Virus record (IMG/VR): IMGVR_UViG_3300050120_000230
Location: 248,001-312,000 of that record
Length of the DNA stretch: 64,000 nucleotides
Direction: 5' to 3' (one strand)
Below, one piece after another: positions 3,753-49,468 of the stretch (position 1 is its first letter; each line of letters opens with the position of its first letter). The notes below the pieces were generated by a model, which was given only the letters and a program-made list of their open reading frames with translations, did no database searches and was not told the origin of the DNA. Both the position numbers and the translations under genes were made by a program.

Positions 3753-4035
3753 AGGTCACGGTTACCAGCCCTCTAGCACAATTATCCGAGATAATCCAGT
3801 CGTAATAGACCATCTTGAATAGTGTTGCGTCAGCAAGACTCTTAAAAGAAAGGAAGACGAGGGTCGTTTGTTTCGTCCAACCGTCATTGTCCGGTTTGCC
3901 ATAGCCAGTTTTGGCTTTGGCTTTTATTCTGAAGTTGCAATTGGTGTTGAGCCACAGGATCATTTCATCGATCCATTCAGCAAACTTGGTGTCCTCGCTC
4001 GGCCCATCTAGATAGAACTTTGACCATTGGGTCAT
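3727..4035 (-). CDS. DAxxFK[LM]xW-family protein
   Basis: DATLFKMVYY. Confidence 0.7.
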   Translation of the reverse strand: MTQWSKFYLDGPSEDTKFAEWIDEMILWLNTNCNFRIKAKAKTGYGKPDNDGWTKQTTLVFLSFKSLADATLFKMVYYDWIISDNCARGLVTVTYDYDFEPR

Positions 4036-4547
4036 AGGAGAGCACGGCGCGTATTTTCTAGCATTTGCTCCGTCACCATTTGCTTCAGGATTTGACGTTT
4101 CGCTCTACGCTTTTGTTTGCTGCCTCGCGGCGCCTTTCGATATCGCACACGAAGCGCAAAAATCGCGGCCGTAGGTCCGGTCATCGGTTGCACGCCACAA
4201 ATGTCATAAGCGATGACATTCGGCATAGCACGGCGAACGAGCGAGATAAGAACGCGATTGAGTTTCTGTTCGTCGGTGATGATCTCCCCAGAGAAGAACA
4301 GCTTGAACAGAGTGGCGTCACGATTCGAGCGGAACTTCACCTGAATGAACGACGGCCATTTGAACTGTTCCCACGTCTGGCCGCCGCCAGAACTGCCGAT
4401 CTTCGCGACCTTGGCCGTCTTCGTTTTGTTGGCGCGCAACCATTCTTCAATGCGGTCGTGCATTTCGCGAAATTGATCGACGATTGCGTTCGCCGATGAA
4501 TTGGGACGCAGATCGGGCCGGAGGCAGAAAGTGGACCACTTGGACAT
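4032..4547 (-). CDS. DAxxFKL-family domain fused to a major-capsid (gp23) Gol-like segment
   Basis: DATLFKLFF followed by VLISLVRRAMPNVIAYDICGVQPMTGPTAAIFALRVRY. Confidence 0.75.
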   Translation of the reverse strand: MSKWSTFCLRPDLRPNSSANAIVDQFREMHDRIEEWLRANKTKTAKVAKIGSSGGGQTWEQFKWPSFIQVKFRSNRDATLFKLFFSGEIITDEQKLNRVLISLVRRAMPNVIAYDICGVQPMTGPTAAIFALRVRYRKAPRGSKQKRRAKRQILKQMVTEQMLENTRRALL

Positions 4548-4552
4548 TTGGT

Positions 4553-5113
4553 TTACGATGTCACGAAATTGAACGGAGCGCAAACGCCTCCGCTGAACTC
4601 GGCCGCTGCCTCAAGTGCCGCTTCAAGTCGCCATTTCGGCTTCAGGTTGGCATGAGTTCCGGTCGTGTAGAGCGAACCAAGCGCGTAGCTTTCTCCGCAG
4701 CCCACAGCAGCATACTCCATGAGATTTTCGCCGACTTGAAAATCTGCATCGATCTGGAAGAGGCGGCCCTGAGTCCCAACGAGGAAACAACCGCCGGTTT
4801 CTTCGTTGGAATCGATACGGCTGAAACCATGTTCTTTGAATGATTTTCGCAAGGCCGTAATGAACTCCCGCACCATGAACTCCATCAGCGGGTCATCGGT
4901 CTTGGCTTTATCGAAATCTTCGAACTTCGGTGGCTTGAAGTCATATTGAAGAATCTGACCCATCCGAAACGACGAGGTGAAGCCCATCGCGAAGTCCCCA
5001 TTGGTGAAAACCTTCTTGTCTTTGCGGATGACGATGTCGAGGCCAGACACACCGGCGCTGTCGCCTGCTAGATGCGTCTTACCCTTGTGGGCGATCCCAA
5101 CAATGCAAGTCAT
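4553..5113 (-). CDS. HslV/proteasome-type Ntn (Thr) protease
   Basis: Starts MTCIVG (N-terminal Thr nucleophile); AGDS; AVGCGESYALG. Confidence 0.75.
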   Translation of the reverse strand: MTCIVGIAHKGKTHLAGDSAGVSGLDIVIRKDKKVFTNGDFAMGFTSSFRMGQILQYDFKPPKFEDFDKAKTDDPLMEFMVREFITALRKSFKEHGFSRIDSNEETGGCFLVGTQGRLFQIDADFQVGENLMEYAAVGCGESYALGSLYTTGTHANLKPKWRLEAALEAAAEFSGGVCAPFNFVTS

Positions 5114-5797: not shown

Positions 5798-6346
5798 TTA
5801 AGTATTCCTCACTTTAACCAAGCCCTTTGGGAATGTCATTATTCCGAGCGCATAGGGGATGTTCTTTTCGCTGTAGCCATTCCAAACCCGAGGAATCTCG
5901 AAGTTCATCGTGATCCACATGCGGTAACGCTCTGCATCTTCTTCATTTCGGAAAGCAGCGTTGTTGATTTGCGAATCTGACCCGATGCCGTGAGCGTTGT
6001 AGACATCAAGTTCGATGCCCCGCCCCTCATAGTTTCCGCAAAATATGGAGATATCTGGACTGATTTCGTAGAGCGGATTGATGGATTTGAACCCGGCGCC
6101 GCTGTTTCGCATGATAAAGCCACCCACTTCATGGGGCGTCAGGTGCGTCATTCGGGCAAAGTCACGAAACCCTTCTGCTCTACCAAAAGTACCGGGTCTG
6201 CGGATGTTGACTTCTTGGCCCACGAACCAGACGGTTTGTCCAAGCATGGTCTTCATCTCCATCAGCGTAGAGATGCGACCGTGGGCTTGGTCGAGACAAT
6301 ATTCAGGCGGGTGGATCATGGAATATTTTGTATAGCACCATGTCAC
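5798..6346 (-). CDS. Hypothetical protein
   Basis: Part of a packed minus-strand gene run. Confidence 0.55.
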   Translation of the reverse strand: MTWCYTKYSMIHPPEYCLDQAHGRISTLMEMKTMLGQTVWFVGQEVNIRRPGTFGRAEGFRDFARMTHLTPHEVGGFIMRNSGAGFKSINPLYEISPDISIFCGNYEGRGIELDVYNAHGIGSDSQINNAAFRNEEDAERYRMWITMNFEIPRVWNGYSEKNIPYALGIMTFPKGLVKVRNT

Positions 6347-6644
6347 GCTCGCTGGCGAATTGTAGACCGTAGCGATAGCAATTCCGCCCGCCGCCTACCC
6401 AAAACACGCGCACAACTTTGAAGCCGTCTGCCAAGTTGTCACAACACCAGCCGAGATGCTCGGGTGCGATATGAAAGGAATGGGGGTAGGTCATGCCTTT
6501 GCTTTTCTCGCCGGATGTGCGGCGATATCGCTTGGCAAGCCAGAGCACCATCGGTGGACAGTCGCGATCCGAGGCAACCGGCACGTCGTCGAACAATACG
6601 TTCGCGTTGAAGATGTCCCGCACCATCCCCAGATTTTTAGTCAT
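6303..6644 (-). CDS. DAxxFK[LM]xW-family protein
   Basis: WCCDNL...F.SERDMVLYKIFH. Confidence 0.65.
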   Translation of the reverse strand: MTKNLGMVRDIFNANVLFDDVPVASDRDCPPMVLWLAKRYRRTSGEKSKGMTYPHSFHIAPEHLGWCCDNLADGFKVVRVFWVGGGRNCYRYGLQFASERDMVLYKIFHDPPA

Positions 6645-12128: not shown

Positions 12129-12452
12129 TCAATCTACAGCGGCGAGCCTCTCCGCAAAATGCATTTTGAAAATCACCGCATCGGTTTCTCTCGGGAAAGA
12201 AATGGCTACGTAGGAATGCGCGTTTCCCCACTCTTTCTTTGCATGAGTAGTCACCAATGTGAAATCATGCTCCATGTTATAGGTCCGCAAGAATTCACGG
12301 AGGCCCGACCACTCTTCATCCATCATTCGACTCAGCGAAACCACTTCGTAGACCGTCATAGGTCTAGTAAAGATGGTCCCTTGTTTTGTGGAATTCAGCT
12401 CATCGATGGTTAATGTGGCAGAAAACAACCTGAACTCAGTCTTCAACTTCAA
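12129..12452 (-). CDS. DAxxFK[LM]xW-family protein
   Basis: DAVIFKMHF. Confidence 0.65.
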   Translation of the reverse strand: MKLKTEFRLFSATLTIDELNSTKQGTIFTRPMTVYEVVSLSRMMDEEWSGLREFLRTYNMEHDFTLVTTHAKKEWGNAHSYVAISFPRETDAVIFKMHFAERLAAVD

Positions 12453-17027: not shown

Positions 17028-17324
17028 TTACGCCCAAAACAGCTTGAAGAGCAGCGCGTCATCCTCGGACTCAAAATAGAAGATGAACGTGAAACGGTCT
17101 TCGGGCGTCCCTAAACGCTCGGACGTGTCATAGAACACCACATGCTTGAGTTTTTTGTTGCACCACTTCACGAAACCCGTTTGGAAAATCTTCAGTTCCC
17201 AGAGTGATCCTTTCCGATCAGGATGACGTAGGCGAACTGTGGGGACCATGACATAGTGTAGGCCGCGCACTTCATCCTCGCTCGGATGCTGGTATCTAAG
17301 CGGCGATTTCCGGCGAGTTCTCAT
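17028..17324 (-). CDS. DAxxFK[LM]xW-family protein
   Basis: DALLFKLFWA. Confidence 0.7.
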   Translation of the reverse strand: MRTRRKSPLRYQHPSEDEVRGLHYVMVPTVRLRHPDRKGSLWELKIFQTGFVKWCNKKLKHVVFYDTSERLGTPEDRFTFIFYFESEDDALLFKLFWA

Positions 17325-17440: not shown

Positions 17441-18139
17441 ATGAAAAGGATTCTGGAAATCCGCTCCGCTGAAGGCGGCGCCGATTCTCAACTGTTCGTC
17501 CGCGATCTCTCGGACGCCTATCTTCGCCTGTTCGCCCGCAAGGGTTGAAAGTCCCGCGTCGTAAGGGAACGCCCATCTGACGCGGGCATAAGCGAGATCG
17601 CCTTCGAAATCGAAGGCAAGGGTCTCGAACCTCTCAAAAATGAAATCGGCGGACACCGCATTCAGCGTGTCCCTCCCACCGAAAGGCGCGGCCGTGTCCA
17701 CACGAGCACCGTGACCGTTGCTGTCATGGATGCGGATGTTACGATGCTGTCCACCTTTTCGGCGCGGGGGGCTGGCGATTTCCGAATCGAATGGTTTTCC
17801 GGTTCGGGAGCAGGAGGCCAGCACCGTAACAAACATCAGAACTCATGTCGGGTGCATCATGTTCCCAGCGGCATGTCCGAAGCCCGCCAAGGTCGCAAGC
17901 GCGAGGCAAACCTCAAAGATGCTATGGATGGTTTGACCAAGGCGCTCGACGCCGCTCAGCGAGGTGAACTCGGTGCGGTTGTCTCGACGGAACGCAAGGG
18001 TCAAGTCGGAAGTGGTATGCGAGGCGATAAGACCGTGACTATTCGTTTCCAAGACGATAAAGTCGCGCACCACATGACCGGCAAGACGATGTCCGCGACC
18101 CGCTACATGAAAGGGTTCATGGACGAGGTTTGGAGCTAA
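17441..18139 (+). CDS. prfA-like: RF1-like peptide chain release factor (lacks domain 1) with in-frame UGA at codon 36
   Basis: MKRILEIRSAEGG...FARKG*KSR...GGHRIQRVPPTERRGRVHTSTVTVAV...GAGGQHRNK; TGA at 17546-17548; the ORF track reports only 17711-18139. Confidence 0.85.
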
Positions 18140-21070: not shown

Positions 21071-21153
21071 GCCACGGTGGCTCAGCGGCGACAGCGCGTC
21101 ATTCGTAATGACGAATACAAACACCGGGGGTTCGAGTCCCTCCCGTGGCACCA
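21071..21153 (+). tRNA. tRNA-Thr(CGT), enlarged variable loop, encoded CCA
   Basis: Acceptor GCCACGG/CCGTGGC; anticodon stem CGTCA/TGACG, loop TT-CGT-AA; T-loop TTCGAGT. Confidence 0.85.
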
Positions 21154-21999: not shown

Positions 22000-23760
22000 T
22001 CACCTTCGAATGCCGTGCTTCTCGATGTAAGCCGGGATGCCCGGCCGCAATTCGATCATGTGCTTGTAGCTCATGTGCTGTTCGAAATACTCGGCGTAGG
22101 TAGCTGCGTCTCTCATCGGCAAAGACTTGAACGCCATGTCGAACGCTTTGATGTTGTGGTTCATGAGTGTCGTGAGGAAGCGTGACCAGTTCATGCCGGT
22201 GTCAGCTTCGCTCTTGTAAGACATCACGAAATATTTGTAGAGCAACTTGGGTGAGATGTTCTGCGGCGAGCGCGAACCGAATGCCATCACTTCCCTTGTG
22301 AAAGCTTGGATATCATGCGTCATCGCCCAATCAACCAGTTCGTCATTGGCCGCCCGCCCGTGATGGTTCTGCCCAATGACCTTACCGATGTAGCTGGGAT
22401 CGTTTTTCATGATCGTGATGAGTGCCTCGGTTGAGAACGGCACCTTATCGAAGTAGTAGGCGAACTTCGTGGCGTTCTCGTTGAGATAGGCAAGAACTCC
22501 GGGGCGAACGATCTCGGCATGTAGGAACTTTTCGAGTGAGTCCGGGTGCTGTTTCAGAAGAGCTACGAGTTTTTCGTCCGTCATGGGCATCCAACGGATG
22601 AGTCCGATGTAGCCGAAGTAGACGAACTCTATCCAATGCTTCTCGAAAAATTCCTGCGTTCCCTTCGGTAGAATGTCGAACGGGATCAGATGCGGCATCG
22701 ACGACAGGTTCTTTTTCATCACGTCTTCCGCGAGCCCGGCCGCAACTTTTCCGGCCTTCAAATCGCGCATGAACATGCCGGGATTTTCCGAGTAGATTTG
22801 GACGTAACCGCGTTCGCTTTGCACATCGGCGCGATTGTCTACGACTTCCAACACCCGCAGATTTTCTTTCGAGAAGAAGACCGCCTGTGTGGGTTCATTT
22901 TCATGGATGATGCCCCTGTCAGTCGGATCGACCACACCGGAGTATCCGAGCGCACGAAACAGCTTCGACCATTGAGCGCGGACGGTGGCTTTCGCTGCTT
23001 CGACGATCACACTCTCGCTGGTGTATTCGTCTTCTTCGGCCTCATCGTCGTGATCTTCCCAATCATCGTCTTCATCATCGTCGGGCACGAAGTCGTCTTC
23101 ATATTCTTCGTCCTCATCGTCGTCTTCGCCATATTTGATCTCGACGAAATCGCGAGCGTCGGGATTGCCATGAACGCCGTTGGCGATATTGGTCAAATAC
23201 ATCGCAGCGATGCGGGTCACGTTCCAGAAAGCGCCAGCAGTCGATTGAACCAGTGCATGTCGTTCGGCACGGTCCACGTCGATGCGGATGTGCAAACCTT
23301 GGTGATCCATAATAGTCTGGATTTTTTCAACATCTGCTCGCATATCGGCGCGGCTGTAGGTGGACAGGTCGAGTATCTTGCCGCCTGCACGGAAGACCTG
23401 AATGTAAGGCTCGTTGCCTGCGAAAGGCACGACGCCTTTTTCTTTGATGACGTAATCGACCGGATAGGAATAGATGCCAATCGGGGTGTCGTATTGTGAT
23501 TTCGGATTGATACCGAACTTCGTGCCGCGAACGTTGTGGGCACCCTTCTTCGAACTTACGCCGCCTTTGAAGGCAGTATCGGCGCGTAGCTTGTTGCCAT
23601 GACTGGCGACGCCAACATCAGAGACGTAGCTGACGAACACGTCTGTCTGTCCCGCATATTTGGACAATTCCTCTACGGTCGAACGCTTCGGCGCCAACCC
23701 GCCTGCTCGGCGCTTCTCACTGAGGAGAGAACGGTTGTTGAAAAGTTCGACCAGACGCAT
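22000..23760 (-). CDS. Large capsid-targeted-type protein with central Asp/Glu tract
   Basis: MRLVELF...LLSE; ATAAATA 4 nt upstream; DDDEDEEYEDD... tract. Confidence 0.75.
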   Translation of the reverse strand: MRLVELFNNRSLLSEKRRAGGLAPKRSTVEELSKYAGQTDVFVSYVSDVGVASHGNKLRADTAFKGGVSSKKGAHNVRGTKFGINPKSQYDTPIGIYSYPVDYVIKEKGVVPFAGNEPYIQVFRAGGKILDLSTYSRADMRADVEKIQTIMDHQGLHIRIDVDRAERHALVQSTAGAFWNVTRIAAMYLTNIANGVHGNPDARDFVEIKYGEDDDEDEEYEDDFVPDDDEDDDWEDHDDEAEEDEYTSESVIVEAAKATVRAQWSKLFRALGYSGVVDPTDRGIIHENEPTQAVFFSKENLRVLEVVDNRADVQSERGYVQIYSENPGMFMRDLKAGKVAAGLAEDVMKKNLSSMPHLIPFDILPKGTQEFFEKHWIEFVYFGYIGLIRWMPMTDEKLVALLKQHPDSLEKFLHAEIVRPGVLAYLNENATKFAYYFDKVPFSTEALITIMKNDPSYIGKVIGQNHHGRAANDELVDWAMTHDIQAFTREVMAFGSRSPQNISPKLLYKYFVMSYKSEADTGMNWSRFLTTLMNHNIKAFDMAFKSLPMRDAATYAEYFEQHMSYKHMIELRPGIPAYIEKHGIRR

Positions 23761-23805: not shown

Positions 23806-24069
23806 ATGAGCTTTTGGCAACTCGCGAAAGAAGAATTCGCCTACGTGAACCGGTCCTATTGGATGCCGTTCACGTTCACATGGGTGCTGTGCACCAAGGG
23901 TTGGCCAGCGGCGAAGAAGCACTTTCTCGACGCATGGAACGCTCAGAGCCCGTTGCTGCGGAATCGCGAGCATCCTACACCGCCGGAAGGCTATGTGGAT
24001 GGGTGGGGCGTGGACAAGGACGACATCAAAGTTCCACCCATCGTCGTGAAGGTCCCTAAGCGACCTTGA
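23806..24069 (+). CDS. Hypothetical protein
   Basis: SD-like AGGA upstream. Confidence 0.5.
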   Translation: MSFWQLAKEEFAYVNRSYWMPFTFTWVLCTKGWPAAKKHFLDAWNAQSPLLRNREHPTPPEGYVDGWGVDKDDIKVPPIVVKVPKRP

Positions 24070-24559
24070 GCTTCGTCTTTTTTGGCATCCGCGCCGACAC
24101 CGGCATCGCCGCTTCCAACTTCCAGACTTGTTCGAGCGTGCATCCATTCATGCGCGGGCCGAAATAGCTCCGCACGAAATTGGCTCGATGAGCGATGGCT
24201 TGCCCTTCGTCGGCCGAAATGTGCTCAACCAGTATGTTCCTGAAATCGTTACCCGGCATACAAAGGAAGAAGCCGTTGTCATCGCGGAATAACGTCCAGT
24301 CGAACATCATGCTGGGAGTGGACAGCTTCAGATGTAGGTTCCGCTCGACATAGCGACTGGCGTGCATGATTGCATCATGCTTGGAAAGTCCGAAATAATC
24401 TATGGGTGTCGGTAAGCCCATCGAGTCCATCGCGACGGCCACGTAACCGTTCCCAGTTGGATGCACGTCCAACCTGAGAATGTTAGTTCCGTTTTCGGTG
24501 GCGATGTAAATCGGTTCGCCCATAACGTCACTGGCCCCCGACGACTCGAACGACGACAT
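24056..24559 (-). CDS. Hypothetical protein
   Basis: Minus-strand gene run. Confidence 0.55.
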   Translation of the reverse strand: MSSFESSGASDVMGEPIYIATENGTNILRLDVHPTGNGYVAVAMDSMGLPTPIDYFGLSKHDAIMHASRYVERNLHLKLSTPSMMFDWTLFRDDNGFFLCMPGNDFRNILVEHISADEGQAIAHRANFVRSYFGPRMNGCTLEQVWKLEAAMPVSARMPKKTKLKVA

Positions 24560-24815
24560 CGCCTTCGTTTTGATTGTCGCGAATGTGCGGGAGGGCGCCC
24601 AAGCCCTGACCCGGAAGGAACTCGCCTTCCTTCATGCCGACGATCCGAAAATCGCAGTCGTTGTTGCCGAACGGAATGCGCTTCACCCGCTCCAACGCCA
24701 TGGTGGGATCGCTATCTCCGATCTCGATTTCGACTGTAACCAAATAGCTCTTAAGCATCTGATCTCCCAACGTGCCTTGACACGCAGAAAATACCTTAGA
24801 AGCAAGAACCGTCAA
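24528..24815 (-). CDS. Hypothetical protein
   Basis: Minus-strand gene run. Confidence 0.45.
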   Translation of the reverse strand: MTVLASKVFSACQGTLGDQMLKSYLVTVEIEIGDSDPTMALERVKRIPFGNNDCDFRIVGMKEGEFLPGQGLGALPHIRDNQNEGDVVVRVVGGQ

Positions 24816-24821: not shown

Positions 24822-25229
24822 TCAGCCAATCCACCGGAGCTTGAAGTAGAGAGCGTCATTAGACGTGGCGAACTCAACCGTATAGCGCACCATTTCTTCT
24901 TGGGTGGCGTGATAATATTCGGCGTGGCGGCGCGGATAGGCCACGTTGCCTTTCAGATTTTCCATGCACCATTCTTTGACCGGCGCCTTCAGTTTCACGC
25001 GCCATTGTTCGCGCAAGATCGAAGTCGGGATCGGCGACGATATGTCGAGAATGTCTTCGGCTTGATCCGGTGGAACGAAGATGCGGTGCGTCTTGACTTG
25101 AACGTTTAGCGGAAAGGACACGATCTTCGATTTGTCATCGTCCAGAAACCGAATCATCGTATCACTCGGAAAGTCGCTCATGCTCAGCAGACTTTTGATC
25201 GTGATTTTTTCGACTGTCATGACCACCAT
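24822..25229 (-). CDS. DAxxFK[LM]xW-family protein (tandem array, member 8)
   Basis: DALYFKLRWIG. Confidence 0.75.
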   Translation of the reverse strand: MVVMTVEKITIKSLLSMSDFPSDTMIRFLDDDKSKIVSFPLNVQVKTHRIFVPPDQAEDILDISSPIPTSILREQWRVKLKAPVKEWCMENLKGNVAYPRRHAEYYHATQEEMVRYTVEFATSNDALYFKLRWIG

Positions 25230-25531
25230 CGCATCTTGAAGTGAATCGCTGACATCTCATCCATGAACCAGATCGCGTTGACCGGATCGTCTTGGTTGAT
25301 GATTCTCGGCATCGGAATATGTTCCATGCAATCGTATCGAAATCCGGCCGGAATGTAGTGGAAGCCCACTGCACCTTTCACGTTGTCGTCCATCCATGCG
25401 AGCACGTCATCACGAAGGCGTTGGACGGTCTTTCCGCCCTCGTGGGTTCTCACGACCAGATCGTTTGGTATCAGGCAGCGGATAGCAGTTTCTATTTCAT
25501 CTACGCTCGGCCAGCGATTCTCAACCATCAT
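25217..25531 (-). CDS. DAxxFK[LM]xW-family protein (array member 7)
   Basis: SAIHFKMRWWS. Confidence 0.75.
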   Translation of the reverse strand: MMVENRWPSVDEIETAIRCLIPNDLVVRTHEGGKTVQRLRDDVLAWMDDNVKGAVGFHYIPAGFRYDCMEHIPMPRIINQDDPVNAIWFMDEMSAIHFKMRWWS

Positions 25532-25742
25532 GCTTATCTCCCCAACGTAGCTTGAAATGGAGATAGTCTTCGTCGCATTTGAAGGTGATGATGCAGACGG
25601 TGTTGAAGAAATCCATACCCCAGTGCCACTCGTCGCGCATGTTCAGTTTCAGCCACGCGAGAACCTCTGGCGAAGGCCGCCAAGTGTCGTATTTGGTGAA
25701 TACCGAATGTTCTTGGGAAATGGTGATACAACCGCCAGACAT
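25521..25742 (-). CDS. DAxxFK[LM]xW-family protein (array member 6)
   Basis: DYLHFKLRWG; start overlaps upstream TGA. Confidence 0.7.
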   Translation of the reverse strand: MSGGCITISQEHSVFTKYDTWRPSPEVLAWLKLNMRDEWHWGMDFFNTVCIITFKCDEDYLHFKLRWGDKHDG

Positions 25743-25996
25743 CAGAACCACTTCAGCTTGAAATAAATCGCATCCTTGGTTCGCATCGTAACGGCTGGAT
25801 TTCCGACCATCATCTTTGTGCCAAGTTGACCCACCAGCATGAAAGCCTGTGGCGCCAGTTTCCAATATTTGATGCGTTCAGCCCTACACCATTCGTCCAC
25901 GTCAGAACGCAAGAAAATATCATACACGCGAAACCACGATTTGCTAAGACCTTCTATCACCAATTCTCTGGGCAATTCGAAGCGTTCGCGTTTCAT
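25742..25996 (-). CDS. DAxxFK[LM]xW-family protein (array member 5)
   Basis: MKRERFE...DAIYFKLKWF. Confidence 0.7.
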   Translation of the reverse strand: MKRERFELPRELVIEGLSKSWFRVYDIFLRSDVDEWCRAERIKYWKLAPQAFMLVGQLGTKMMVGNPAVTMRTKDAIYFKLKWF

Positions 25997-26220
25997 AGCC
26001 ATCGCATCTTGAACATCAAAGCATCGTTGTCGTTGGCAAATTCGATCTCGAACGGCAGCGCGTAGTCTTTGCGTTCGGAGGACGATTTCCACGACAGATA
26101 AAAATCCTGCACCAACTCTTCGCGGCACCAAGCATCCATTTCATCCAACAGACGAACCTCAGCCAGAACGCGAGTATCATCTCGGATGAATTGAATGGGA
26201 ACAGGGACGATCATGCCCAT
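25993..26220 (-). CDS. DAxxFK[LM]xW-family protein (array member 4)
   Basis: DALMFKMRWL. Confidence 0.75.
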   Translation of the reverse strand: MGMIVPVPIQFIRDDTRVLAEVRLLDEMDAWCREELVQDFYLSWKSSSERKDYALPFEIEFANDNDALMFKMRWL

Positions 26221-26477
26221 TATCCCTCTTCTCCCCAGAACATTTTGAACAGCACCGCATCGGTGTCTTTTGCGAAACTCGCCTCCGCAGTCACCGGCCG
26301 ATTGATGCTAAATCGCGCGGTGCAATCGTTCGGATCACCCTTGCGATGCACTCGCCATTTTCCCTTTAGATTTTTCGCGACCCAAGACAGCACGTCTTTT
26401 CGGAAACGATATCGGCCGTCGCGGATTTCGGCCACGCCGTATGGGACTGAGATGGTGGCCTTCATCTTCATAGCCAT
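26220..26477 (-). CDS. DAxxFK[LM]xW-family protein (array member 3)
   Basis: DAVLFKMFWG. Confidence 0.75.
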   Translation of the reverse strand: MAMKMKATISVPYGVAEIRDGRYRFRKDVLSWVAKNLKGKWRVHRKGDPNDCTARFSINRPVTAEASFAKDTDAVLFKMFWGEEG

Positions 26478-26788
26478 CGCATCTTGAAGGCCAACGCCGC
26501 CGCGTCCGTTCTGAATCGAAAATAAGGCTGGCGATCATCGTCTAGGAAACAGCGAATGTTTCCTCCGATCATTTCCTTCGCCCATTGTTCGATTTCTGGC
26601 GCGGGCAGCCAAATTGACGGCCGCGACCACCATCCGGCCTGCATTCCGGCCGGTCCCGCCGCCCCCCGCGTGAACCACGCCAGTGGATTATGTTCCAACC
26701 CAGCAGAGGGTTTTATCGGCAGTTCGATCATGATCGAAAAACCGAAATTAGCCCAATCACCGGCGAATTCTTCTTCAGTCATAGCCAT
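26468..26788 (-). CDS. DAxxFK[LM]xW-family protein (array member 2)
   Basis: AALAFKMRWL. Confidence 0.75.
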   Translation of the reverse strand: MAMTEEEFAGDWANFGFSIMIELPIKPSAGLEHNPLAWFTRGAAGPAGMQAGWWSRPSIWLPAPEIEQWAKEMIGGNIRCFLDDDRQPYFRFRTDAAALAFKMRWL

Positions 26789-27054
26789 CGCATCTTGAAC
26801 AGCAGCATGTCGGAATCGGTTTCAAACGAGAACGTGAATTCGTAGAGGCCATCTCGGTCGAATGGGTAGGGTGCGGGAAGTTGAGCACTGGTGATTTCCC
26901 ATCCCGCGTGAAGGTTCTCCTCACACCAGACGCGGACATCGCGGCGGATCACGGTGAAGGCATGGGCCGCCTCACGATCATCGCACCAATCTATGTCCAC
27001 GCCGACTATGCCAAGGTACTCAGGCGGGGCGGCCAAACTGAACTCTGAACCCAT
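26779..27054 (-). CDS. DAxxFK[LM]xW-family protein (array member 1)
   Basis: DMLLFKMRWL. Confidence 0.75.
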   Translation of the reverse strand: MGSEFSLAAPPEYLGIVGVDIDWCDDREAAHAFTVIRRDVRVWCEENLHAGWEITSAQLPAPYPFDRDGLYEFTFSFETDSDMLLFKMRWL

Positions 27055-27100
27055 GATTAAGGGTCTAGCATAGCCCGATTTTTTCGTCTACCAAAGTGGA

Positions 27101-27727
27101 ATGGAATCCTCGGGTGGCCTGACGGCCGAACACATTGCCGGGATGTTTCGGCATTTCGAAGAGCACGGCGACGCCACGATAGGTGGGGTGGCGTTGACGC
27201 TGAGTGATCTGGGGAAATACCACGAGCCCTCGCTCGATCCACTCGATATCGACACCGGGATGTGGGTTGCCCGGCAAGGCTCTCGCAAATGGGAAACTCA
27301 CCGAATGGAGATCGGCGCCGGAGCGTGGCGCTTGGCATTTATCAGTTCTGTCAATCCCATACAAATGCAGATGGGTAAGTCCTATTGGGATGGCAAATCA
27401 TATCGTCGTGTTGAGCATGTCGAGGTGTATGGCGATCTCGAACGGTTCAAACACGATGCCACCTTGATCTTGCTATTTGCATCAGAGTGGATGCCCGATC
27501 CTGATCCTCATCCATGGGACCTATCATCGTTCAAAGGTGGTATTGGTTTTTCTTCGGGACGAAGCCTTGGAAAAAGCAGCATCACCAAATCCACCATGAT
27601 GTCTCTTCAACAAATTGGGCGGTCACAAAGAGCCGTGCAAGCAGCAACCGGTGTGCCTGCGATCTTCGTGGACACTGAGGCCAGTTATGACCGTAAAATG
27701 TTCCTGACGGTCATCAAGAACCGTTGA
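27101..27727 (+). CDS. GD..F..D subfamily protein with RecA-like C-terminal fragment
   Basis: YGDLERFKHDATLILLF, then GRSLGKSS...AIFVDTEASYD. Confidence 0.6.
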   Translation: MESSGGLTAEHIAGMFRHFEEHGDATIGGVALTLSDLGKYHEPSLDPLDIDTGMWVARQGSRKWETHRMEIGAGAWRLAFISSVNPIQMQMGKSYWDGKSYRRVEHVEVYGDLERFKHDATLILLFASEWMPDPDPHPWDLSSFKGGIGFSSGRSLGKSSITKSTMMSLQQIGRSQRAVQAATGVPAIFVDTEASYDRKMFLTVIKNR

Positions 27728-28486: not shown

Positions 28487-28729
28487 ATGGCGGCCGACTT
28501 TCACATCAAAAAGCACCATGCCGCAGAGATGGAAGAGCGTCGGCGCCAATTCCCGTACTCGTTCAGGATGAGCACGGTTGTTGGCCCGAGGAAGTTCGCG
28601 ACGAAGGCCGAAGTCATGCAGTGCCGCGCGTTCTTTGAAGGCCAGAAAGTTCTCGTCAATAAGAACACCGCGTACTTCGTCAGAGTGGAAGATGCTATTT
28701 TCTTCAAGATGGGGATGTGGCTGACATGA
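28487..28729 (+). CDS. DAxxFK[LM]xW-family protein
   Basis: DAIFFKMGMW. Confidence 0.7.
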   Translation: MAADFHIKKHHAAEMEERRRQFPYSFRMSTVVGPRKFATKAEVMQCRAFFEGQKVLVNKNTAYFVRVEDAIFFKMGMWLT

Positions 28730-39940: not shown

Positions 39941-41422
39941 GTGGGACGTAAGCAGCTAACGAAGACCTTCGATCATCGCACCGAAGAGTCCTCGATCTAT
40001 CAGAATTGGGAGACTAGCGGTGCGTTCGCCCCTCGCGGCGACGGTCCTGCTTATTTTCTCCCAATGCCACCGCCGAATATCACCGGCATCTTGCACATGG
40101 GGCACGCACTTTTCGCGACCCTGCAAGACATCTCGACCCGCTATCATCGCATGAAAGGGGACGCCACGTTGTGGCTGCCGGGAAGCGACCATGCGGGCCT
40201 CGCAACGCAAGACAAGCTCGATGCTCTCATGATCGAGCAAGGGCTCGACCCTAACGGTCCAGAGTTCGATGCGTTCGCGGAAACCTACAAGCTCAGCCTG
40301 CAAGGCACGATCATGAAACAGCTTCGAAGCTGTGGTGCATCGTGTGATTGGTCCCGCGAGACGTTCACGCTCGACGACCGCTACTCCAACGCCGTCCAGA
40401 CGGCTTGGAAAAAGTGCAACGACGCTGGCCTGACCTACGCCAAGGAAGGTGAACTCTTCATCAACATGGAGCCATTGGCCAAGCGTCTGCTTGACCATCT
40501 CGATGCTGGTGATCTGAAGATCATTCCGGCCGGTGGAGAAGGAACTCTGCGGAACTTCCTGACCAAGATCGAGCCATGGAACATCAGTCGTAAAATCCGC
40601 TGGGGTCACAAAATCCCCGGATGGTTCCACGACGGGCACAACATGGTCTTCGATACATGGTTCTCGTCGGCACTCTGGCCGTTCGCCACGCTTGGTTGGC
40701 CAGACGACACCGAAGACATGCAGCGATTCTACCCGGCGGCCATGATCGAAACGGCTGACGACATTCTGTTCTTCTGGTGTGCGCGGATGCTCATGATGGG
40801 CCTCCTGCTCACCGACCGTCTGCCGTTCGACACGATCTTCCTGCACGGTTTGATCCGTGACAAGCACGGAAAGAAGATGTCGAAATCGGCTGGCAACGGC
40901 ATCGACCCACTCGACATCATCGAACGTTACGGCGCCGACAGTATGCGGTTTGCCTTGGCCGAAGCTGCCACGCCCGGTCAAGACATGAGGATGTGGGACG
41001 ACAAGTTCCAAGCAGGCAAAGCTCTGCGGACGAAACTGTGGAACGCCGCTCGATATTCCTTGGCCCATTACGAACGCCTAGGAAGCCCGCAGGAGCCCTT
41101 TAAGCCCTCGAAGCACTACGACGACGTTGAGATGGAAAAGAGGCTCACAGCGGCTCACAGGGACGCTACAGAGGCATTTGAAGAGCTACGTTACCACGAG
41201 GCTGCTCATGGGATCAGAAAGTTCATCTTCGAAGACTTGTGTGGCTGGTATATCGAGGCCACGAAGAGCCGTCTATACGACGAAGATGACCAAGATGCTC
41301 TTCAAACCCTGATGTGGGCTCTGGATGGCACGTTGAAGATGCTTCATCCGATCATGCCGTTCATCACTGAGCGCATTCGTGAGGCATATTCGGGCACGCC
41401 GCTCATCACAGATGCGTGGTAG
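39941..41422 (+). CDS. valS: Minimal valyl-tRNA synthetase (no CP1 editing domain, no C-terminal coiled coil)
   Basis: PPPNITGILHMGH, GSDHAGLATQ, WNISR..RWGH.IP, VFDTWFSSALWPF, KMSKS, YG.D..RF, LHP.MPFITE. Confidence 0.95.
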   Translation: MGRKQLTKTFDHRTEESSIYQNWETSGAFAPRGDGPAYFLPMPPPNITGILHMGHALFATLQDISTRYHRMKGDATLWLPGSDHAGLATQDKLDALMIEQGLDPNGPEFDAFAETYKLSLQGTIMKQLRSCGASCDWSRETFTLDDRYSNAVQTAWKKCNDAGLTYAKEGELFINMEPLAKRLLDHLDAGDLKIIPAGGEGTLRNFLTKIEPWNISRKIRWGHKIPGWFHDGHNMVFDTWFSSALWPFATLGWPDDTEDMQRFYPAAMIETADDILFFWCARMLMMGLLLTDRLPFDTIFLHGLIRDKHGKKMSKSAGNGIDPLDIIERYGADSMRFALAEAATPGQDMRMWDDKFQAGKALRTKLWNAARYSLAHYERLGSPQEPFKPSKHYDDVEMEKRLTAAHRDATEAFEELRYHEAAHGIRKFIFEDLCGWYIEATKSRLYDEDDQDALQTLMWALDGTLKMLHPIMPFITERIREAYSGTPLITDAW

Positions 41423-41726: not shown

Positions 41727-42002
41727 TCAGAGCGTAAGGAACATTTTCGCGAAGACAGCATCGGCCGGGACCTTGCATCCCACGATGTATTCGTAGTTCA
41801 CCGAATGCATGGTGCAGAATGTCCAATCGTTCGTCATGAATGGCGCGACTGCATCTGGAAAATCAGAAGGTTTGATTTTCGAAGAGATCGTGACCGTGCA
41901 TGGGAAACCATTGTCGATCATGTATTGGAGACGTTCATCCCAATCGGCGTGTTTCTGGTAATACTCACCAGCCCATTCGCTTAGAGGAATGCACCTACTC
42001 AA
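41727..42002 (-). CDS. DAxxFK[LM]xW-family protein
   Basis: DAVFAKMFL. Confidence 0.65.
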   Translation of the reverse strand: MSRCIPLSEWAGEYYQKHADWDERLQYMIDNGFPCTVTISSKIKPSDFPDAVAPFMTNDWTFCTMHSVNYEYIVGCKVPADAVFAKMFLTL

Positions 42003-42262
42003 AACCAGAACAACTTGAACATAGTTGCATCGGTCTCACTGACCGTTTCGAATGTCGGCTTGTAGCCTATGCCAGAATACCAACTGGCATTCATGTTCTC
42101 AATGCACCAGTCCCATGTTTCATGGGCCATGAAGTAGCCGTCGTTCTGGTTGCCCTCAACGAGATGGCGAGGCAAGTCGATCTTATATACGACAGGTTTC
42201 GTCGATTGGATCAGTTCGACCCAATTGTTCAAGCCACAGTAAGATTTACCGAGAGCAATCAT
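41999..42262 (-). CDS. DAxxFK[LM]xW-family protein
   Basis: WCIEN...DATMFKLFWF. Confidence 0.75.
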   Translation of the reverse strand: MIALGKSYCGLNNWVELIQSTKPVVYKIDLPRHLVEGNQNDGYFMAHETWDWCIENMNASWYSGIGYKPTFETVSETDATMFKLFWF

Positions 42263-42576
42263 AGCCAGAACGTCTTGAAGAGCACGGCGTCGCGCTCGTT
42301 GAATAGTTGAAAATGGATATACGTCTTGGGACGGGGCTCATAGTGACAGACGTTCACCAGTCCTTCTCTATTTTCCATGAGCCAGTCATAGGCATCTTGT
42401 GCTCGCCCACTGAACATGTTCGGCCCGAAGTCATAGGACGCGCGCTTCGGTGTGGCAGCCGTTCGAAGCTTCAGGCCAAACGTCGCCACGGTCACGTTGC
42501 AGAGTTCAATGATCTCTGGCGCGGGCTCATTAGCACCATCGCCCCATCCGAAAGGAAACACCGGCCTCACATCCAC
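42259..42576 (-). CDS. DAxxFK[LM]xW-family protein
   Basis: DAVLFKTFWL. Confidence 0.75.
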   Translation of the reverse strand: MDVRPVFPFGWGDGANEPAPEIIELCNVTVATFGLKLRTAATPKRASYDFGPNMFSGRAQDAYDWLMENREGLVNVCHYEPRPKTYIHFQLFNERDAVLFKTFWL

Positions 42577-42830
42577 ATCAACTTGAACTGCAAGGCATCG
42601 CGATAATTGGGAATGCCCAGATAGAAAACATCTGCATTTGAATTCGGGTAAAACAGGTCCGCAAAATTTGCCTTTGCCCAGTTGAATGCGGCTTCCGCCT
42701 TTGGCTCCCAGTTATAGACTGCCACCGGCGCGTCGCAACATTGAATGGCTTCTCGTTGCAACGCAAATACCCAGCCCGCCGCAACTTCGACCGGCCCAGA
42801 GATTTCCAAAATCGGGTCAGAGATTTCCAT
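42567..42830 (-). CDS. DAxxFK[LM]xW-family protein
   Basis: DALQFKLMWM. Confidence 0.75.
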   Translation of the reverse strand: MEISDPILEISGPVEVAAGWVFALQREAIQCCDAPVAVYNWEPKAEAAFNWAKANFADLFYPNSNADVFYLGIPNYRDALQFKLMWM

Positions 42831-45103: not shown

Positions 45104-45827
45104 GTCGTTCTCGTATCGGGGTTGGCGTGGGGCTGGCTTCAAGTTCAAGTTCACCAAAGGCGTAAACGTCTTGGTGGGGATGAACGGCTGCGGCAAAACC
45201 AACTCTGCCGAACTGTTGGCGATTCTTGTGGGTCACAAAGACGCGCACAAACTGTTGCGCGAAGACGACCAACTCAAATACGCCAAGATCGTCGTCGGCG
45301 AAGACGTGGGACCGTCTGCTACGCAGCGATACGTTTTGGAACTGAAGGACGGCATCGACCTTGAGAAAATCAACGCCTTCAAGGACTGTTTACCAACACT
45401 GACCAGTTTCGTGCTTCAGCAAGACGATCTGCGGGATGATCGGTTCGTGACGGCTAGGCGCGAGCCGGTTGAATGCCAAAAAGACATGCTGGAATGGCTC
45501 CGCGCGCACGATCTCGATCTGCGGCTCTACGTCAAGGATGGTGAGTACGCGACATTGCTGGTTAGCGAGACCGGCGCGCAACGCTATCTGATGACCGTGG
45601 GGATGCGGCGGGCGCCGAGCGCAACGCCGATGATCGTCGAGCATCCCGAGCGCAGCCTCCACATCATGCTGCGGAGGCGGATTGCCGATTACTATCGCGA
45701 GAGCAACGATCAGCAAGTCATCTTGACGACGCATGACCCGGAAGTGCTTAGCATGGTAGACAGTGCTCGATGGGGCACATACCACGATTGTGCCATCGAC
45801 ATGTCGGACAAGAAAATCAGATGGTAA
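45093..45827 (+). CDS. Compact ABC/AAA_15-21-type ATPase (OLD/AbiEii-like ATPase fold)
   Basis: GVNVLVGMNGCGKTN; IVEHPERSLH; QVILTTHDP. Confidence 0.75.
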   Translation: MYIESFSYRGWRGAGFKFKFTKGVNVLVGMNGCGKTNSAELLAILVGHKDAHKLLREDDQLKYAKIVVGEDVGPSATQRYVLELKDGIDLEKINAFKDCLPTLTSFVLQQDDLRDDRFVTARREPVECQKDMLEWLRAHDLDLRLYVKDGEYATLLVSETGAQRYLMTVGMRRAPSATPMIVEHPERSLHIMLRRRIADYYRESNDQQVILTTHDPEVLSMVDSARWGTYHDCAIDMSDKKIRW

Positions 45828-46285
45828 CGGTCAAGGACTTGTCTAATCTTCTCGATACGCTGGTCGTCGATGACACGCGCTCGATCATTCTCGTTCCAAA
45901 GCAAACGCCGAATCACCTAGACTCAGCGCACTCCATCCCACCGGAATATTTGTGGATGATTCCGTTGTCGGCGGCTGGACACTACATCATCCACGACCAC
46001 GCCAAAGAACCAGAGGGCATACAAGCATTTGAGCATTGTAGGTCACCGATCATTCAATACGATTTGTATGATGACCGTAGCTTCAGCTACCAGCGCACTC
46101 GTCTCCACGACATGGGCATGACACAGTGGTGCGAAGAAACCCTTCGCGGCCACTACATCGTGCGTAAGAACTATGAGGCGGTTTTGCCGCCGCCGAGCGT
46201 CAAAACGATCATCGAAGTCTGGTTCGATGACCCAGTGGACGCCGTGGTTTTCAAGATGCGATGGAAGGGCAACCCATGCGAATAG
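45821..46285 (+). CDS. DAxxFK[LM]xW-family protein
   Basis: WCEE...DAVVFKMRWK. Confidence 0.7.
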   Translation: MVTVKDLSNLLDTLVVDDTRSIILVPKQTPNHLDSAHSIPPEYLWMIPLSAAGHYIIHDHAKEPEGIQAFEHCRSPIIQYDLYDDRSFSYQRTRLHDMGMTQWCEETLRGHYIVRKNYEAVLPPPSVKTIIEVWFDDPVDAVVFKMRWKGNPCE

Positions 46286-46578
46286 AGGATCGCCCGAACA
46301 TCGCTCTTTCGCATCTTGACCTTCAAGATGGCAGGCACGAGGACATCAGCGATCTGCCTATCGTCGTCGTGCCGTTGAAAAACGTCTGTATTTCTGGTGG
46401 CAGCCTTGCATTGGCGCCCGAGACTAGGCATTGGCTAATTGCCAACGTCGGCCACCAATATCGTGGCGAGCAGATTTCGTGCTGGGATTATATCCTCGCA
46501 GAGAGCGCCACCGGGCTCGCGACGTTTCGGTTCAAAGACGTAACGCACGCCACCTTGTTCAAAATGTTCTTCTCATGA
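46276..46578 (+). CDS. DAxxFK[LM]xW-family protein
   Basis: HATLFKMFFS. Confidence 0.7.
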   Translation: MRIEDRPNIALSHLDLQDGRHEDISDLPIVVVPLKNVCISGGSLALAPETRHWLIANVGHQYRGEQISCWDYILAESATGLATFRFKDVTHATLFKMFFS

Positions 46579-49072: not shown

Positions 49073-49148
49073 GGAGCGGTAGCTCAGTGGTAGCAGCGCC
49101 GGTTTGTCAGGCCGAAGGTCGCGGGTTCGATCCCCGTCCGCTTCGCCA
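49073..49148 (+). tRNA. tRNA-Asp(GTC), encoded CCA
   Basis: GGAGCGG/CCGCTTC; loop TT-GTC-AG. Confidence 0.9.
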
Positions 49149-49173
49149 TTTCATTTGAAGCTAGGTGATTTGA

Positions 49174-49245
49174 GCGGCTGTAGCTCAGTGGTAGAGCATC
49201 TCGTTGCCAACGAGAATGTCGCGGGTTCGAATCCCGCCAGCCGCT
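49174..49245 (+). tRNA. tRNA-Gly(GCC), no encoded CCA, flanked by a 13-bp inverted repeat
   Basis: GCGGCTG/CAGCCGC, U73; TCTCG-TTGCCAA-CGAGA. Confidence 0.9.
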
Positions 49246-49281
49246 CAAATCACCTAGAAGGCAATCCTCCGAGACCTTTAC

Positions 49282-49355: not shown

Positions 49356-49357
49356 AT

Positions 49358-49431: not shown

Positions 49432-49468
49432 ATCTCAGCTTCGGTTGAGACGATCTTTGAAACTATAT

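What the first reader, a model, noticed from the sequence alone, without database searches (positions are those of the whole stretch)
24822..27054. Cassette-like array: identical 21-bp junction repeats join tandem DAxxFK[LM]xW genes
Seen: eight overlapping paralogs. TCATAGCCATCGCATCTTGAA occurs perfectly at 25993, 26468 and 26779. Each copy encodes FKMRWL* and the next gene's ATG through an ATGA overlap. The 15-bp core recurs at 25226 and, on the other strand, at 46250. Identity includes synonymous positions although the rest of the genes are highly diverged. Inference: the motif doubles as a recombination handle and translational-coupling signal, allowing integron-like gain, loss and shuffling of gene cassettes without a dedicated recombinase.
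Basis: partly seen in the sequence, partly recalled or inferred. Interest (0 to 1): 0.65.

Follow-up and report, generated by a model that had tools for sequence, protein, structure and literature searches.

The report
Paralog gene array in a megaphage
Eight tightly overlapping copies of an undescribed small-protein family, which has about 80 members in this huge phage genome, share a 21-base junction mostly because it encodes one gene's conserved end and the next gene's start, not because it is a proven recombination site.

Summary
Eight minus-strand genes (27054 to 24822) overlap head-to-tail. The 21-mer occurs exactly three times and its 15-base core five times in the window.

The window belongs to a 415-kb phage record, related to a 570-kb contig and distantly to Sinorhizobium phage Phosso and Atu_ph07. 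The eight genes are the largest cluster of a family with 70-81 members in this genome and 983 representative clusters in metagenomes. The family has no Pfam or PHROG match. Its members share a C-terminal beta-alpha-beta-beta-alpha module ending DAxxFK[LM]xW.

The 21-mer reads FKMRWL-stop in one frame and Met-Ala-Met of the next gene in another. Its rare codons CGA and CTA are the ones that create those ATGs. With that constraint, triple identity has a chance of about 0.005-0.03.

Orthologous junctions in a related phage differ at synonymous sites, so no conserved DNA site exists. Genome-wide, neighbouring paralogs show no excess of shared synonymous codons.

Three relatives keep gene order but differ by whole-gene gains and losses. 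Gene 2, bounded by two 21-mers, is found only here. Cassette-like turnover and translational coupling are therefore plausible. Shuffling is not seen, and an integron-like recombination handle is not shown. No read data could be obtained.

The parts
27067..27094 (-). Promoter-like site TTGGTAGAC, 13-base gap, TATGCT, ending 12 bases before the g1 start. It would drive the whole array as one transcription unit.
   Evidence: The sequence is shown. The same TTGGTnGAC / TAnnnT arrangement lies upstream of the array in L004, L021 and L020. TTGGTTGAC recurs at least 17 times on the + strand of the genome. The generic sigma-70 scan did not report it. Function is inferred.
26779..27054 (-). g1, 91 aa family member ending FKMRWL. 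Orthologs are a1 in L004 (36% identity) and r1 in L021 (35%).
26779..26799 (-). Junction 21-mer copy 1: the end of g1 (FKMRWL-stop) and the start of g2 (ATGGCTATGA).
26468..26788 (-). g2, 106 aa family member. It has no ortholog in L004, L021 or L020 and is bounded on both sides by the 21-mer.
26468..26488 (-). Junction 21-mer copy 2: the end of g2 and the start of g3.
26220..26477 (-). g3, 85 aa family member ending FKMFWGEEG. Orthologs are a2 in L004 (66%) and q3 in L020 (51%). It is absent from L021. A GGAGAAGAGGG stretch precedes the TAATG junction to g4.
25993..26220 (-). g4, 75 aa, the minimal family member and the one modelled. Orthologs are a3 (47%), r4 (45%) and s4 (36%).
25993..26013 (-). 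Junction 21-mer copy 3: the end of g4 and the start of g5.
25742..26002 (-). g5, 86 aa family member. L004 has two g5-like genes (a4, a5) and L021 has one (r5). A TGATG junction leads to g6.
25521..25742 (-). g6, 73 aa, the best conserved member (a6 71%). It is absent from L021. Its tail RWGDKHDG holds the start of g7.
25217..25531 (-). g7, 104 aa family member ending FKMRWWS. It has an ortholog in L021 (r7, 38%) but none in L004. It contains the 15-base core at 25226-25240 and an ATGA overlap with g8.
24822..25229 (-). g8, 135 aa, the last gene of the array. Orthologs are a7 (53%) and r8 (39%). L004 and L021 carry one further member after it (a8, r9) that this window lacks.
24788..24815 (-). 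Sigma-70-like promoter TTGACG, 16-base spacer, TATTTT directly after the g8 stop. It marks the end of the array unit. The same ATATCnTTGACGG follows r9 in L021.
46250..46264 (+). The 15-base core inside another family member (45770-46285, ending FKMRWKGNPCE). Its CGATGG supplies the ATG of the next family gene (46261-46578).

Best explanation
The region is one operon of eight ancient, strongly diverged paralogs of an undescribed small-protein family. That family has expanded to about 80 copies in this very large T4-like phage.

Each protein has a variable N-terminal part and a conserved C-terminal beta-alpha-beta-beta-alpha module of about 55 residues ending DAxxFK[LM]xW. The genes are packed so tightly that the last codons of one gene contain the start codon(s) of the next. 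Ribosomes that finish one gene most likely restart on the next (translational coupling). This step is inferred, not shown.

The 21-base repeat is that dual-coded junction. It reads FKMRWL-stop in one frame and Met-Ala-Met in the other, which leaves only about four bases free to vary. It is therefore mainly a product of protein conservation and overlapping starts, not a dedicated DNA site.

Over evolutionary time the array gains and loses whole genes in register while keeping their order. Because every member ends in nearly the same 15-21 bases, unequal homologous recombination or replication slippage between gene ends is a plausible route for these gains and losses. It is unproven.

The proteins are most likely diversified accessory (host-interaction) proteins, possibly expressed early. 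Their biochemical function is unknown.
For: Array and junction anatomy.

Family size:
- 81 hmmsearch hits, 70 of them at E<1e-5, in 17 clusters plus 35 singletons. That is about 12% of roughly 640 ORFs.
- 983 representative proteins in the 1.84-billion library.
- 34 matches in cultured phage Phosso, where the genes looked at are annotated as hypothetical.
- No Pfam or PHROG match.

Fold: a confident AF2 model, pLDDT 89.9.

Dual coding:
- CGA and CTA are rare in the genome, yet they are exactly the codons that create ATG in the next frame.
- 41 of 81 family genes overlap the next ORF, 21 of them by NTGA.
- Given FKMRWL plus the overlap, I calculate a chance of triple identity of about 0.005 (ATGA only) to 0.03 (both ATGs), using the frequencies.

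No conserved DNA site: orthologous junctions in L004 differ at 3 of 21 bases each, all synonymous in the upstream frame. Other lineages vary likewise.

No genome-wide codon homogenisation among neighbours: p = 0.16, or 0.30 without this array.

Turnover: collinear order with whole-gene presence or absence in L004, L021 and L020.

Single transcription unit: a conserved promoter-like site lies upstream, the next promoter follows directly, and no credible internal signals are found.
Against: - The three junctions are identical here, while the two orthologous junctions in L004 have each diverged and differ from one another. This asymmetry hints at some homogenisation or common recent origin in this lineage.
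- The terminus FKMRWL-stop occurs only in this array among the 81 members.
- Neighbouring paralogs are more alike in the last 12 residues than distant ones (50% vs 42%, p = 0.001) but not in the rest of the domain. This could reflect local exchange rather than old duplication.
- Coupling, expression timing and protein function are all inferred from sequence only.
- Only three distant relatives could be compared.
Confidence: 0.7

Rival explanations
1. The near-identical 3' ends of the genes are active substrates for unequal homologous or microhomology-mediated recombination. This is carried out by the phage's own RecA/UvsX-type machinery or by replication slippage. It would delete, duplicate or import whole genes in register and so be the actual mechanism of array turnover.
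For: - Gene 2 is bounded by two perfect 21-mers and is absent from all relatives.
- All indels among four genomes are whole genes.
- L004 has a duplicated g5-like pair.
- A RecA-family recombinase is encoded at genome 142796-143563.
- Because the motif sits at the very end of each gene, crossovers there give intact genes.
- The three junctions are identical here but diverged in L004.
Against: - Selection alone would leave only in-register indels in such a tightly overlapped operon, whatever the mechanism.
- The g7 indel is bounded by similar gene starts, not by the motif.
- Gene 2 has no close paralog, so it is not a recent duplicate.
- There is no excess of shared synonymous codons among neighbours.
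- Two independent samples of another lineage carry identical arrays, although their DNA is 100% identical throughout, so this says little.
- No population data could be obtained.
Confidence: 0.25
2. The 21-mer is a dedicated, selected cis-element, making the array an integron-like cassette system. It would act as a site for a recombinase, or as an RNA or DNA structural signal.
For: Only the exact triple identity and its position at cassette-like boundaries.
Against: - It is not conserved in orthologous junctions of relatives.
- There is no inverted repeat or stable fold; the consensus energy is -4 kcal/mol.
- No tyrosine integrase is found in the 415 kb held.
- Only 3 of 7 junctions in the array carry it.
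- Gene order is never shuffled.
Confidence: 0.03
3. The junction identity is an assembly artefact, with short repeats causing collapsed or chimeric assembly of a variable array.
For: The record is a metagenome assembly, and reads could not be inspected.
Against: - A 21-base repeat is far below read length.
- All eight ORFs are intact.
- Six of the eight have collinear orthologs in the independently assembled L004. g7 has its ortholog in L021, and only g2 has none.
Confidence: 0.02

Closest known systems
Lineage-specific expansions of small proteins in jumbo phages, such as the roughly 35-copy zinc-ribbon family of Bacillus phage G, called unprecedented in PMC7824862
   Same: One small domain is multiplied many times within a single very large phage genome. 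Many copies sit in tandem, their sequences are highly diverged, and the function is unknown.
   Different: The fold is different and unnamed. The copy number is about twice as high (70-81 in 415 kb). The family is also widespread in metagenomic relatives.
Translationally coupled overlapping genes (ATGA, TGATG, TAATG junctions) in phage and bacterial operons. This is established knowledge, not tested here.
   Same: The genes lie on the same strand, the stop overlaps the next start, the J junctions lack a Shine-Dalgarno sequence, and there are no internal promoters.
   Different: Here the overlap falls inside a strongly conserved protein motif. The same DNA word therefore recurs, and the Arg-Trp codons (NGA TGG) often supply an extra upstream start.
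Integron gene-cassette arrays
   Same: A series of short, mostly promoterless genes lies behind one promoter. Gene content varies between relatives, and a recurring sequence sits at the gene boundaries.
   Different: There is no integrase and no attC-type imperfect palindrome. The genes are all paralogs rather than unrelated cassettes. Gene order is conserved, and the repeat is coding sequence.
Tandem-array dynamics by unequal recombination, such as poxvirus genomic accordions and deletions between short direct repeats in phage T4. These are recalled from memory and serve as a lead only.
   Same: Direct repeats flanking genes could allow copy-number change. A phage recombinase is present.
   Different: Accordion copies are recent and nearly identical. 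Here the paralogs are 18-33% identical, and most have orthologs in distant relatives, so the duplications are ancient.
Type I KH domains, the best structural resemblance
   Same: A small alpha+beta sandwich. The best VIA-align matches have Z 5.2-5.7, rmsd 2.7-2.8 Å and 60-64 residues aligned.
   Different: The Z-score is below the level the tool regards as meaningful. Foldseek finds nothing. The family has a single helix where KH has two, and no GXXG loop among its conserved positions.

Membership tests
Integron cassette array | Adjacent tyrosine-recombinase integrase (IntI) | tested here: not met
   PF00589 has no match in the 415-kb record, and the controls were positive. Flanking genes have no Pfam match. 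The record is about 72% complete, so absence is not absolute.
Integron cassette array | attC site (imperfect inverted repeat forming a hairpin) at the end of each cassette | tested here: not met
   There are no inverted repeats at the junctions. The consensus fold of the three junction contexts is -4.1 kcal/mol with no covariation of note.
Integron cassette array | Cassettes are unrelated genes whose order differs between arrays | tested here: not met
   All eight genes are paralogs. Shared genes are collinear in L004, L021 and L020.
Translationally coupled operon | Same-strand genes whose stop codon overlaps or abuts the next start, without their own ribosome-binding site | tested here: met
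   All seven junctions overlap by 1-13 bases. The three J junctions have no GGAG, GAGG or AGGA within 20 bases upstream.
Translationally coupled operon | Downstream translation depends on upstream translation | not testable with these tools
   This needs reporter fusions or ribosome profiling.
Tandem paralog array (lineage-specific expansion) | Adjacent genes share significant sequence homology and a common domain | tested here: met
   The array genes score E = 4.7e-16 to 5.6e-9 against the family HMM. See also alignment A1 and the common predicted fold.
Tandem paralog array (lineage-specific expansion) | Neighbours are each other's closest relatives (recent tandem duplication) | tested here: not met
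   Only 3 of 47 clustered members have a neighbour as their best paralog. A neighbour effect is seen only in the last 12 residues. The duplications are old.
Genomic accordion (recent amplification) | Near-identical tandem copies, variable in number within populations | tested here: not met
   The copies are 18-33% identical. Population variation could not be tested.
KH domain (type I) | beta-alpha-alpha-beta-beta-alpha fold with a GXXG loop between the two helices | tested here: not met
   The model has one helix between beta1 and beta2. No Gly is among the invariant or nearly invariant positions of the 127-sequence alignment. The best Z is 5.7, and there is no Pfam KH match.

The most novel reading that the evidence does not exclude
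The family is a self-diversifying repertoire. About 80 genes per genome all end in almost the same 15-21 bases. Recombination between any two gene ends, within or between co-infecting phages, would then swap, delete or duplicate whole genes without ever breaking a reading frame or the coupling to the next gene. The conserved C-terminal codons would thus serve three roles at once: protein motif, restart signal, and in-register crossover point. That would give huge phages a recombinase-independent cassette system for fast turnover of host-interaction proteins.
Probability: 0.15. Interest if true: 0.7.

Novelty: new member of a known kind. Interest (0 to 1): 0.45.

Why it matters
The 21-base repeat itself is mostly explained by overlapping reading frames, so it is not evidence for a new recombination system.

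What lies under it is more notable. An unnamed small-protein family makes up roughly one gene in eight of a phage whose relatives reach 570 kb. At 70-81 copies it is about twice the size of the phage G zinc-ribbon expansion that the literature called unprecedented. It recurs in arrays in many uncultured huge phages and in at least one cultured one, Sinorhizobium phage Phosso.

The family evolves fast and turns over gene by gene, which is the pattern expected of host-takeover or counter-defence proteins. Because Phosso can be grown, both open questions can be tested at the bench: what these proteins do, and whether their shared 3' ends really promote in-register recombination.

Tried and rejected
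- Nucleotide and protein searches of isolated phages with the array, g8 and P0002 found nothing.
- Pfam, PHROGs and a PDB sequence-profile search found nothing meaningful.
- Foldseek against the PDB with both models gave no match at E<=0.001. VIA-align gave at best Z 5.7 to KH domains, which I treat as a common arrangement and not as homology. BFVD and the ESM Atlas returned only uncharacterised phage proteins.
- The search for related loci with the whole-family alignment failed because no stretch was conserved enough. With the 208-aa flank gene alone it found nothing. The viral and metagenome scans with the g6 alignment returned only the one relative already found.
- The word-based protein search with g6 returned only the query itself.
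No reads were laid, so the direct test for deletion or duplication variants could not be run. I did not try to get round this.
- The 570-kb relative is not held for whole-record search.
- An RNA structure at the junction was rejected.
- Codon bias as the explanation was rejected, because CGA and CTA are rare codons.
- Recent duplication as the origin of gene 2 was rejected, because it has no close paralog.
- A uniformly acidic, DNA-mimic character was rejected. Net charge ranges from -10 to +7 and is conserved between orthologs.
- No alternative genetic code was needed.
Full report
**1. The observation**

The 21-mer TCATAGCCATCGCATCTTGAA lies at 25993, 26468 and 26779. There is no further copy with up to three mismatches, and none is expected by chance. 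No other copy exists in the whole genome record. The 15-base core occurs five times in the window, at 25226, 25999, 26474 and 26785 on the minus strand and at 46250 on the plus strand.

The genes lie on the minus strand. Eight ORFs run from 27054 to 24822 and each overlaps the next by 1-13 bases. I call them:
- g1 26779-27054
- g2 26468-26788
- g3 26220-26477
- g4 25993-26220
- g5 25742-26002
- g6 25521-25742
- g7 25217-25531
- g8 24822-25229

On the coding strand the repeat reads TTC AAG ATG CGA TGG CTA TGA, which is FKMRWL-stop. In the frame of the next gene it reads ATG GCT ATG A, which is Met-Ala-Met. Identity ends exactly at the borders of the 21-mer. The proteins are otherwise 18-33% identical.

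**2. Where the window comes from**

The window is bases 248001-312000 of a 415,409-base IMG/VR virus record, estimated to be 72% complete. It carries a T4 gp15-type tail-sheath stabiliser, two class I aminoacyl-tRNA synthetase genes, an RF-1-domain protein and seven tRNA genes.

By the gp15-like protein, the nearest cultured phages are Sinorhizobium phage Phosso (42% identity, 469 kb) and Agrobacterium phage Atu_ph07 (40%, 490 kb). A closer uncultured relative sits on a 569,661-base contig. This is therefore a very large T4-like phage.

**3. The eight genes are the tip of a very large family**

A motif scan and then an HMM built from this genome's own members find 81 ORFs in the 415 kb, 70 of them at E<1e-5. 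They lie in 17 clusters of two to eight genes plus 35 singletons. This array is the largest cluster. That is roughly 12% of about 640 ORFs.

About 26 members lie in the window, on both strands. None of the nine members scanned has a significant Pfam or PHROG match.

A profile search of 1.84 billion representative proteins gives 983 hits at E<=0.001. Most are 60-170 residues long with the match at the C-terminus. None of ten clusters looked up carries a name beyond "hypothetical protein".

The family forms similar arrays on other huge-phage contigs with GC content from 37 to 58%. Phosso has 34 matches, and all the genes looked at there are annotated as hypothetical. Atu_ph07 gives one weak match.

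**4. The protein**

With a 127-sequence alignment, AlphaFold2 gives a confident model of g4, with pLDDT 89.9 and pTM 0.72. The elements are strand 3-7, helix 26-35, strands 40-44 and 57-61, and helix 64-74.

The invariant or nearly invariant positions are a Trp in the first helix, a Phe in the last strand, and D..xFK..W in the last helix. The N-terminal part and the loop between the last two strands vary greatly in length.

Structure searches gave nothing solid:
- Foldseek finds nothing significant in the PDB.
- The aligner that does not depend on Foldseek gives at best Z 5.7 to type I KH domains. That is below the level its own notes treat as meaningful.
- The family lacks the second helix and the GXXG loop of KH domains.
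- BFVD and the ESM Atlas return only uncharacterised phage proteins, some from Atu_ph07.

Net charge differs widely between paralogs, from -10 to +7, but is kept between orthologs. I read this as one small scaffold that presents many different surfaces. The biochemical function remains unknown.

**5. Why the 21 bases are identical**

Codon usage from 308 long ORFs gives TTC 0.80, AAG 0.66, CGA 0.147 and CTA 0.045. Under codon usage alone, three independent FKMRWL-stop ends would be identical with a probability of about 2e-4 (my calculation). The identity also uses rare codons. Codon bias is therefore not the explanation.

The two rare codons are, however, exactly those that create a start codon in the next frame. 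CGA-TGG gives ATG, and CTA-TGA gives ATG.

Across the family, 41 of 81 genes overlap the following ORF. Of these, 21 overlap by NTGA, 7 by one base and 13 by more. Every family end with Leu directly before an NTGA overlap uses CTA.

Arg before Trp is CGA or AGA in 13 of 25 family cases. The genome background is 16 of 104.

If one requires FKMRWL, the ATGA overlap and the observed codon frequencies, the chance of triple identity is about 0.005. If both ATGs are required it is about 0.03. The identity is thus mostly, though not entirely, explained by two overlapping reading frames laid over a strongly conserved peptide.

**6. Is it a conserved DNA site? No**

In the nearest relative (L004, IMGVR_UViG_3300009177_000043) the orthologous junctions differ:
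- a1 to a2 is TTCAAGATGAGGTGGCTGTGA, with GTG starts.
- a3 to a4 ends CGC TGG CTG TAA TG.
- a4 to a5 ends CGG TGG ATG TGA TG.

The peptide and the overlap are kept. The synonymous bases are not. The 570-kb relative uses CGG throughout, and its own 15-mer TTCAAGATGCGGTGG occurs three times. Phosso and two other lineages vary freely.

The junction contexts have no inverted repeat and no stable or covarying fold.

**7. Is there DNA-level homogenisation?**

I aligned 75 members to the family HMM. For columns where two members share an amino acid, I asked how often they also share the codon.
- Neighbours (same strand, within 1.5 kb) share it 57.5% of the time and non-neighbours 54.1% (permutation p = 0.16).
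- Without this array, p = 0.30.

There is thus no general concerted evolution at synonymous sites.

At the protein level, neighbours are more alike in the last 12 columns (50% vs 42%, p = 0.001). This also holds without this array. The rest of the domain shows no such effect (16.3% vs 15.9%, p = 0.32).

The simplest reading is that neighbours descend from old tandem duplications. Their trace then survives only in the slowly evolving motif. Local exchange is not excluded.

Two further facts keep that door open. The three junctions are identical here while the two orthologous ones in L004 have diverged. In addition, FKMRWL-stop occurs nowhere else among the 81 members.

**8. Comparison of arrays**

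Orthology is by BLASTP.
- In L004 the array sits next to the same upstream flank gene (L004 8766-9395, matching window 27101-27727).
- In L021 it sits between the same two flank genes (L021 3523-4413, matching window 27101-27727, and L021 6625-7047, matching window 24056-24559).

| Genome | Array content, in order |
|---|---|
| Window | g1 g2 g3 g4 g5 g6 g7 g8 |
| L004 | a1 (=g1), a2 (=g3), a3 (=g4), a4 and a5 (both g5-like), a6 (=g6), a7 (=g8), a8 (extra) |
| L021 | r1 (=g1), r4 (=g4), r5 (=g5/a4), rX (new), r7 (=g7), r8 (=g8), r9 (a8-like) |
| L020, a 2.5-kb fragment | q3 (=g3), then a different 143-residue member |

The order of shared genes never changes. Content changes by whole genes at least five or six times among these genomes. 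Gene 2 is unique to the window, and it is the gene bounded by two 21-mers. Gene 7 is shared with the more distant L021 but is missing from L004. There, the boundary lies in the similar first codons of g7 and g8, not in the motif.

Ortholog identity ranges from 35 to 71%, so these proteins evolve fast and unevenly.

The two pairs of near-identical contigs available (L024/L025, L021/L022) are 100% identical. They say nothing about short-term variation.

**9. Transcription and translation**

A promoter-like TTGGTAGAC, 13-base gap, TATGCT ends 12 bases before the g1 start. It is conserved upstream of the arrays of L004, L021 and L020. TTGGTTGAC recurs many times in the genome.

A sigma-70-like site follows directly after g8, and the same sequence follows r9 in L021. 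The only sigma-70-like hit inside the array (25947-25919) and the terminator-like hit (26128-26109) are no more than the shuffled sequences give, so I see no credible internal signal.

The starts of g2, g3 and g5 have no Shine-Dalgarno-like run within 20 bases. g4, by contrast, is preceded by GGAGAAGAGGG.

I infer one transcript and termination-reinitiation at the J junctions. This is inference from sequence.

**10.

- The translational-coupling half is well founded as an inference.
- "Gain and loss of cassettes" is seen.
- "Shuffling" is not seen.
- "Integron-like" fails every defining test: no integrase in the 415 kb held, no attC, and the genes are paralogs.
- A "recombination handle" selected as such is unlikely, because the DNA word is not conserved.

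A weaker version remains reasonable. The shared 3' ends may be fortuitous in-register substrates for the phage's RecA/UvsX-type recombination or for slippage. I give this about one chance in four of being the main route of turnover.

In an operon packed this tightly, selection alone would leave only in-register indels. The pattern therefore does not prove the mechanism. The decisive test is reads spanning junction-to-junction deletions or duplications. I did not seek another route to the same data.

**11. Novelty and interest**

Tandem arrays of diverged paralogs with overlapping stops and starts are a known kind of thing. The 21-mer is largely a coding by-product, which lowers the original claim.

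The family itself appears undescribed and is very large for a phage. The roughly 35-copy zinc-ribbon expansion of phage G was called unprecedented (PMC7824862), and this family has about twice as many copies. It is present in a cultivable phage, so both its function and the recombination question can be tested. I score overall interest at 0.45.

Noticed in passing
whole genome G000; in the window e.g. 191-496(+), 3727-4035(-), 4032-4583(-), 6303-6644(-), 12129-12452(-), 17028-17324(-), 28487-28729(+), 41999-42830(-, three genes), 45770-46578(+, two), 49624-49911(-), 56606-56956(+), 59876-60422(+, two): The DAxxFK[LM]xW family is spread over the whole 415-kb genome on both strands. It has 81 hits, in 17 clusters plus 35 singletons, which is about 12% of ORFs.
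   Followed up: yes
window 27067-27094(-); genome-wide TTGGTTGAC: A recurrent promoter-like word TTGGT[TA]GAC, followed about 13 bases later by a TAnnnT box. It is conserved upstream of the family arrays in four related phages. It often lies directly after the stop of a family gene. It may be the early promoter type of this phage group.
   Followed up: partly
window about 17600-18100(+): A protein with PCRF and RF-1 domains and a GGQ motif, resembling a peptide-chain release factor or peptidyl-tRNA hydrolase. It is conserved in the relatives (L004 189-617; L024 7575-8045).
   Followed up: partly
window 39941-41422(+) and 52199-54136(+): Two class I aminoacyl-tRNA synthetase genes (tRNA-synt_1 plus an anticodon-binding domain). 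The first, at 493 aa, looks like only the C-terminal part of such an enzyme.
   Followed up: no
window 49073-49621(+): A cluster of six tRNA genes (Asp, Gly, Glu, Glu, Gly and one that ARAGORN reports with a two-base anticodon 'tc'). It abuts a family gene on the other strand. A seventh tRNA (Thr-CGT) lies at 21071-21153.
   Followed up: no
window 22000-23760(-): A 586-aa protein with a long Asp/Glu-rich tract and no Pfam match. It is 62% identical to a 604-aa protein in L004. In L004 the array lies downstream of this gene on the opposite strand, not upstream on the same strand as here, so the region has been rearranged between the two phages.
   Followed up: partly
window 4032-4583(-); P0002, P0012, P0019, P0048: Some family members carry a long extension after the motif. 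Some metagenomic proteins contain two copies of the module in one chain. These may be fusions, or read-through of a former junction.
   Followed up: no
L021 4745-4921(-): In the 570-kb relative, a 58-aa strongly hydrophobic ORF on the opposite strand sits between the first and second array genes. Here and in L004, g2 and/or g3 lie at that position.
   Followed up: no
genome G000:C1:142796-143563(+), outside the window: A RecA/UvsX-family recombinase gene. No tyrosine integrase is found in the 415 kb held.
   Followed up: partly
family-wide (75 aligned members): Array neighbours are more alike than non-neighbours in the last 12 residues only (50% vs 42%, p = 0.001). The rest of the domain and synonymous codon choice show no such effect. 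This could be old tandem ancestry retained only in the slow-evolving motif, or local exchange. It is unresolved.
   Followed up: partly
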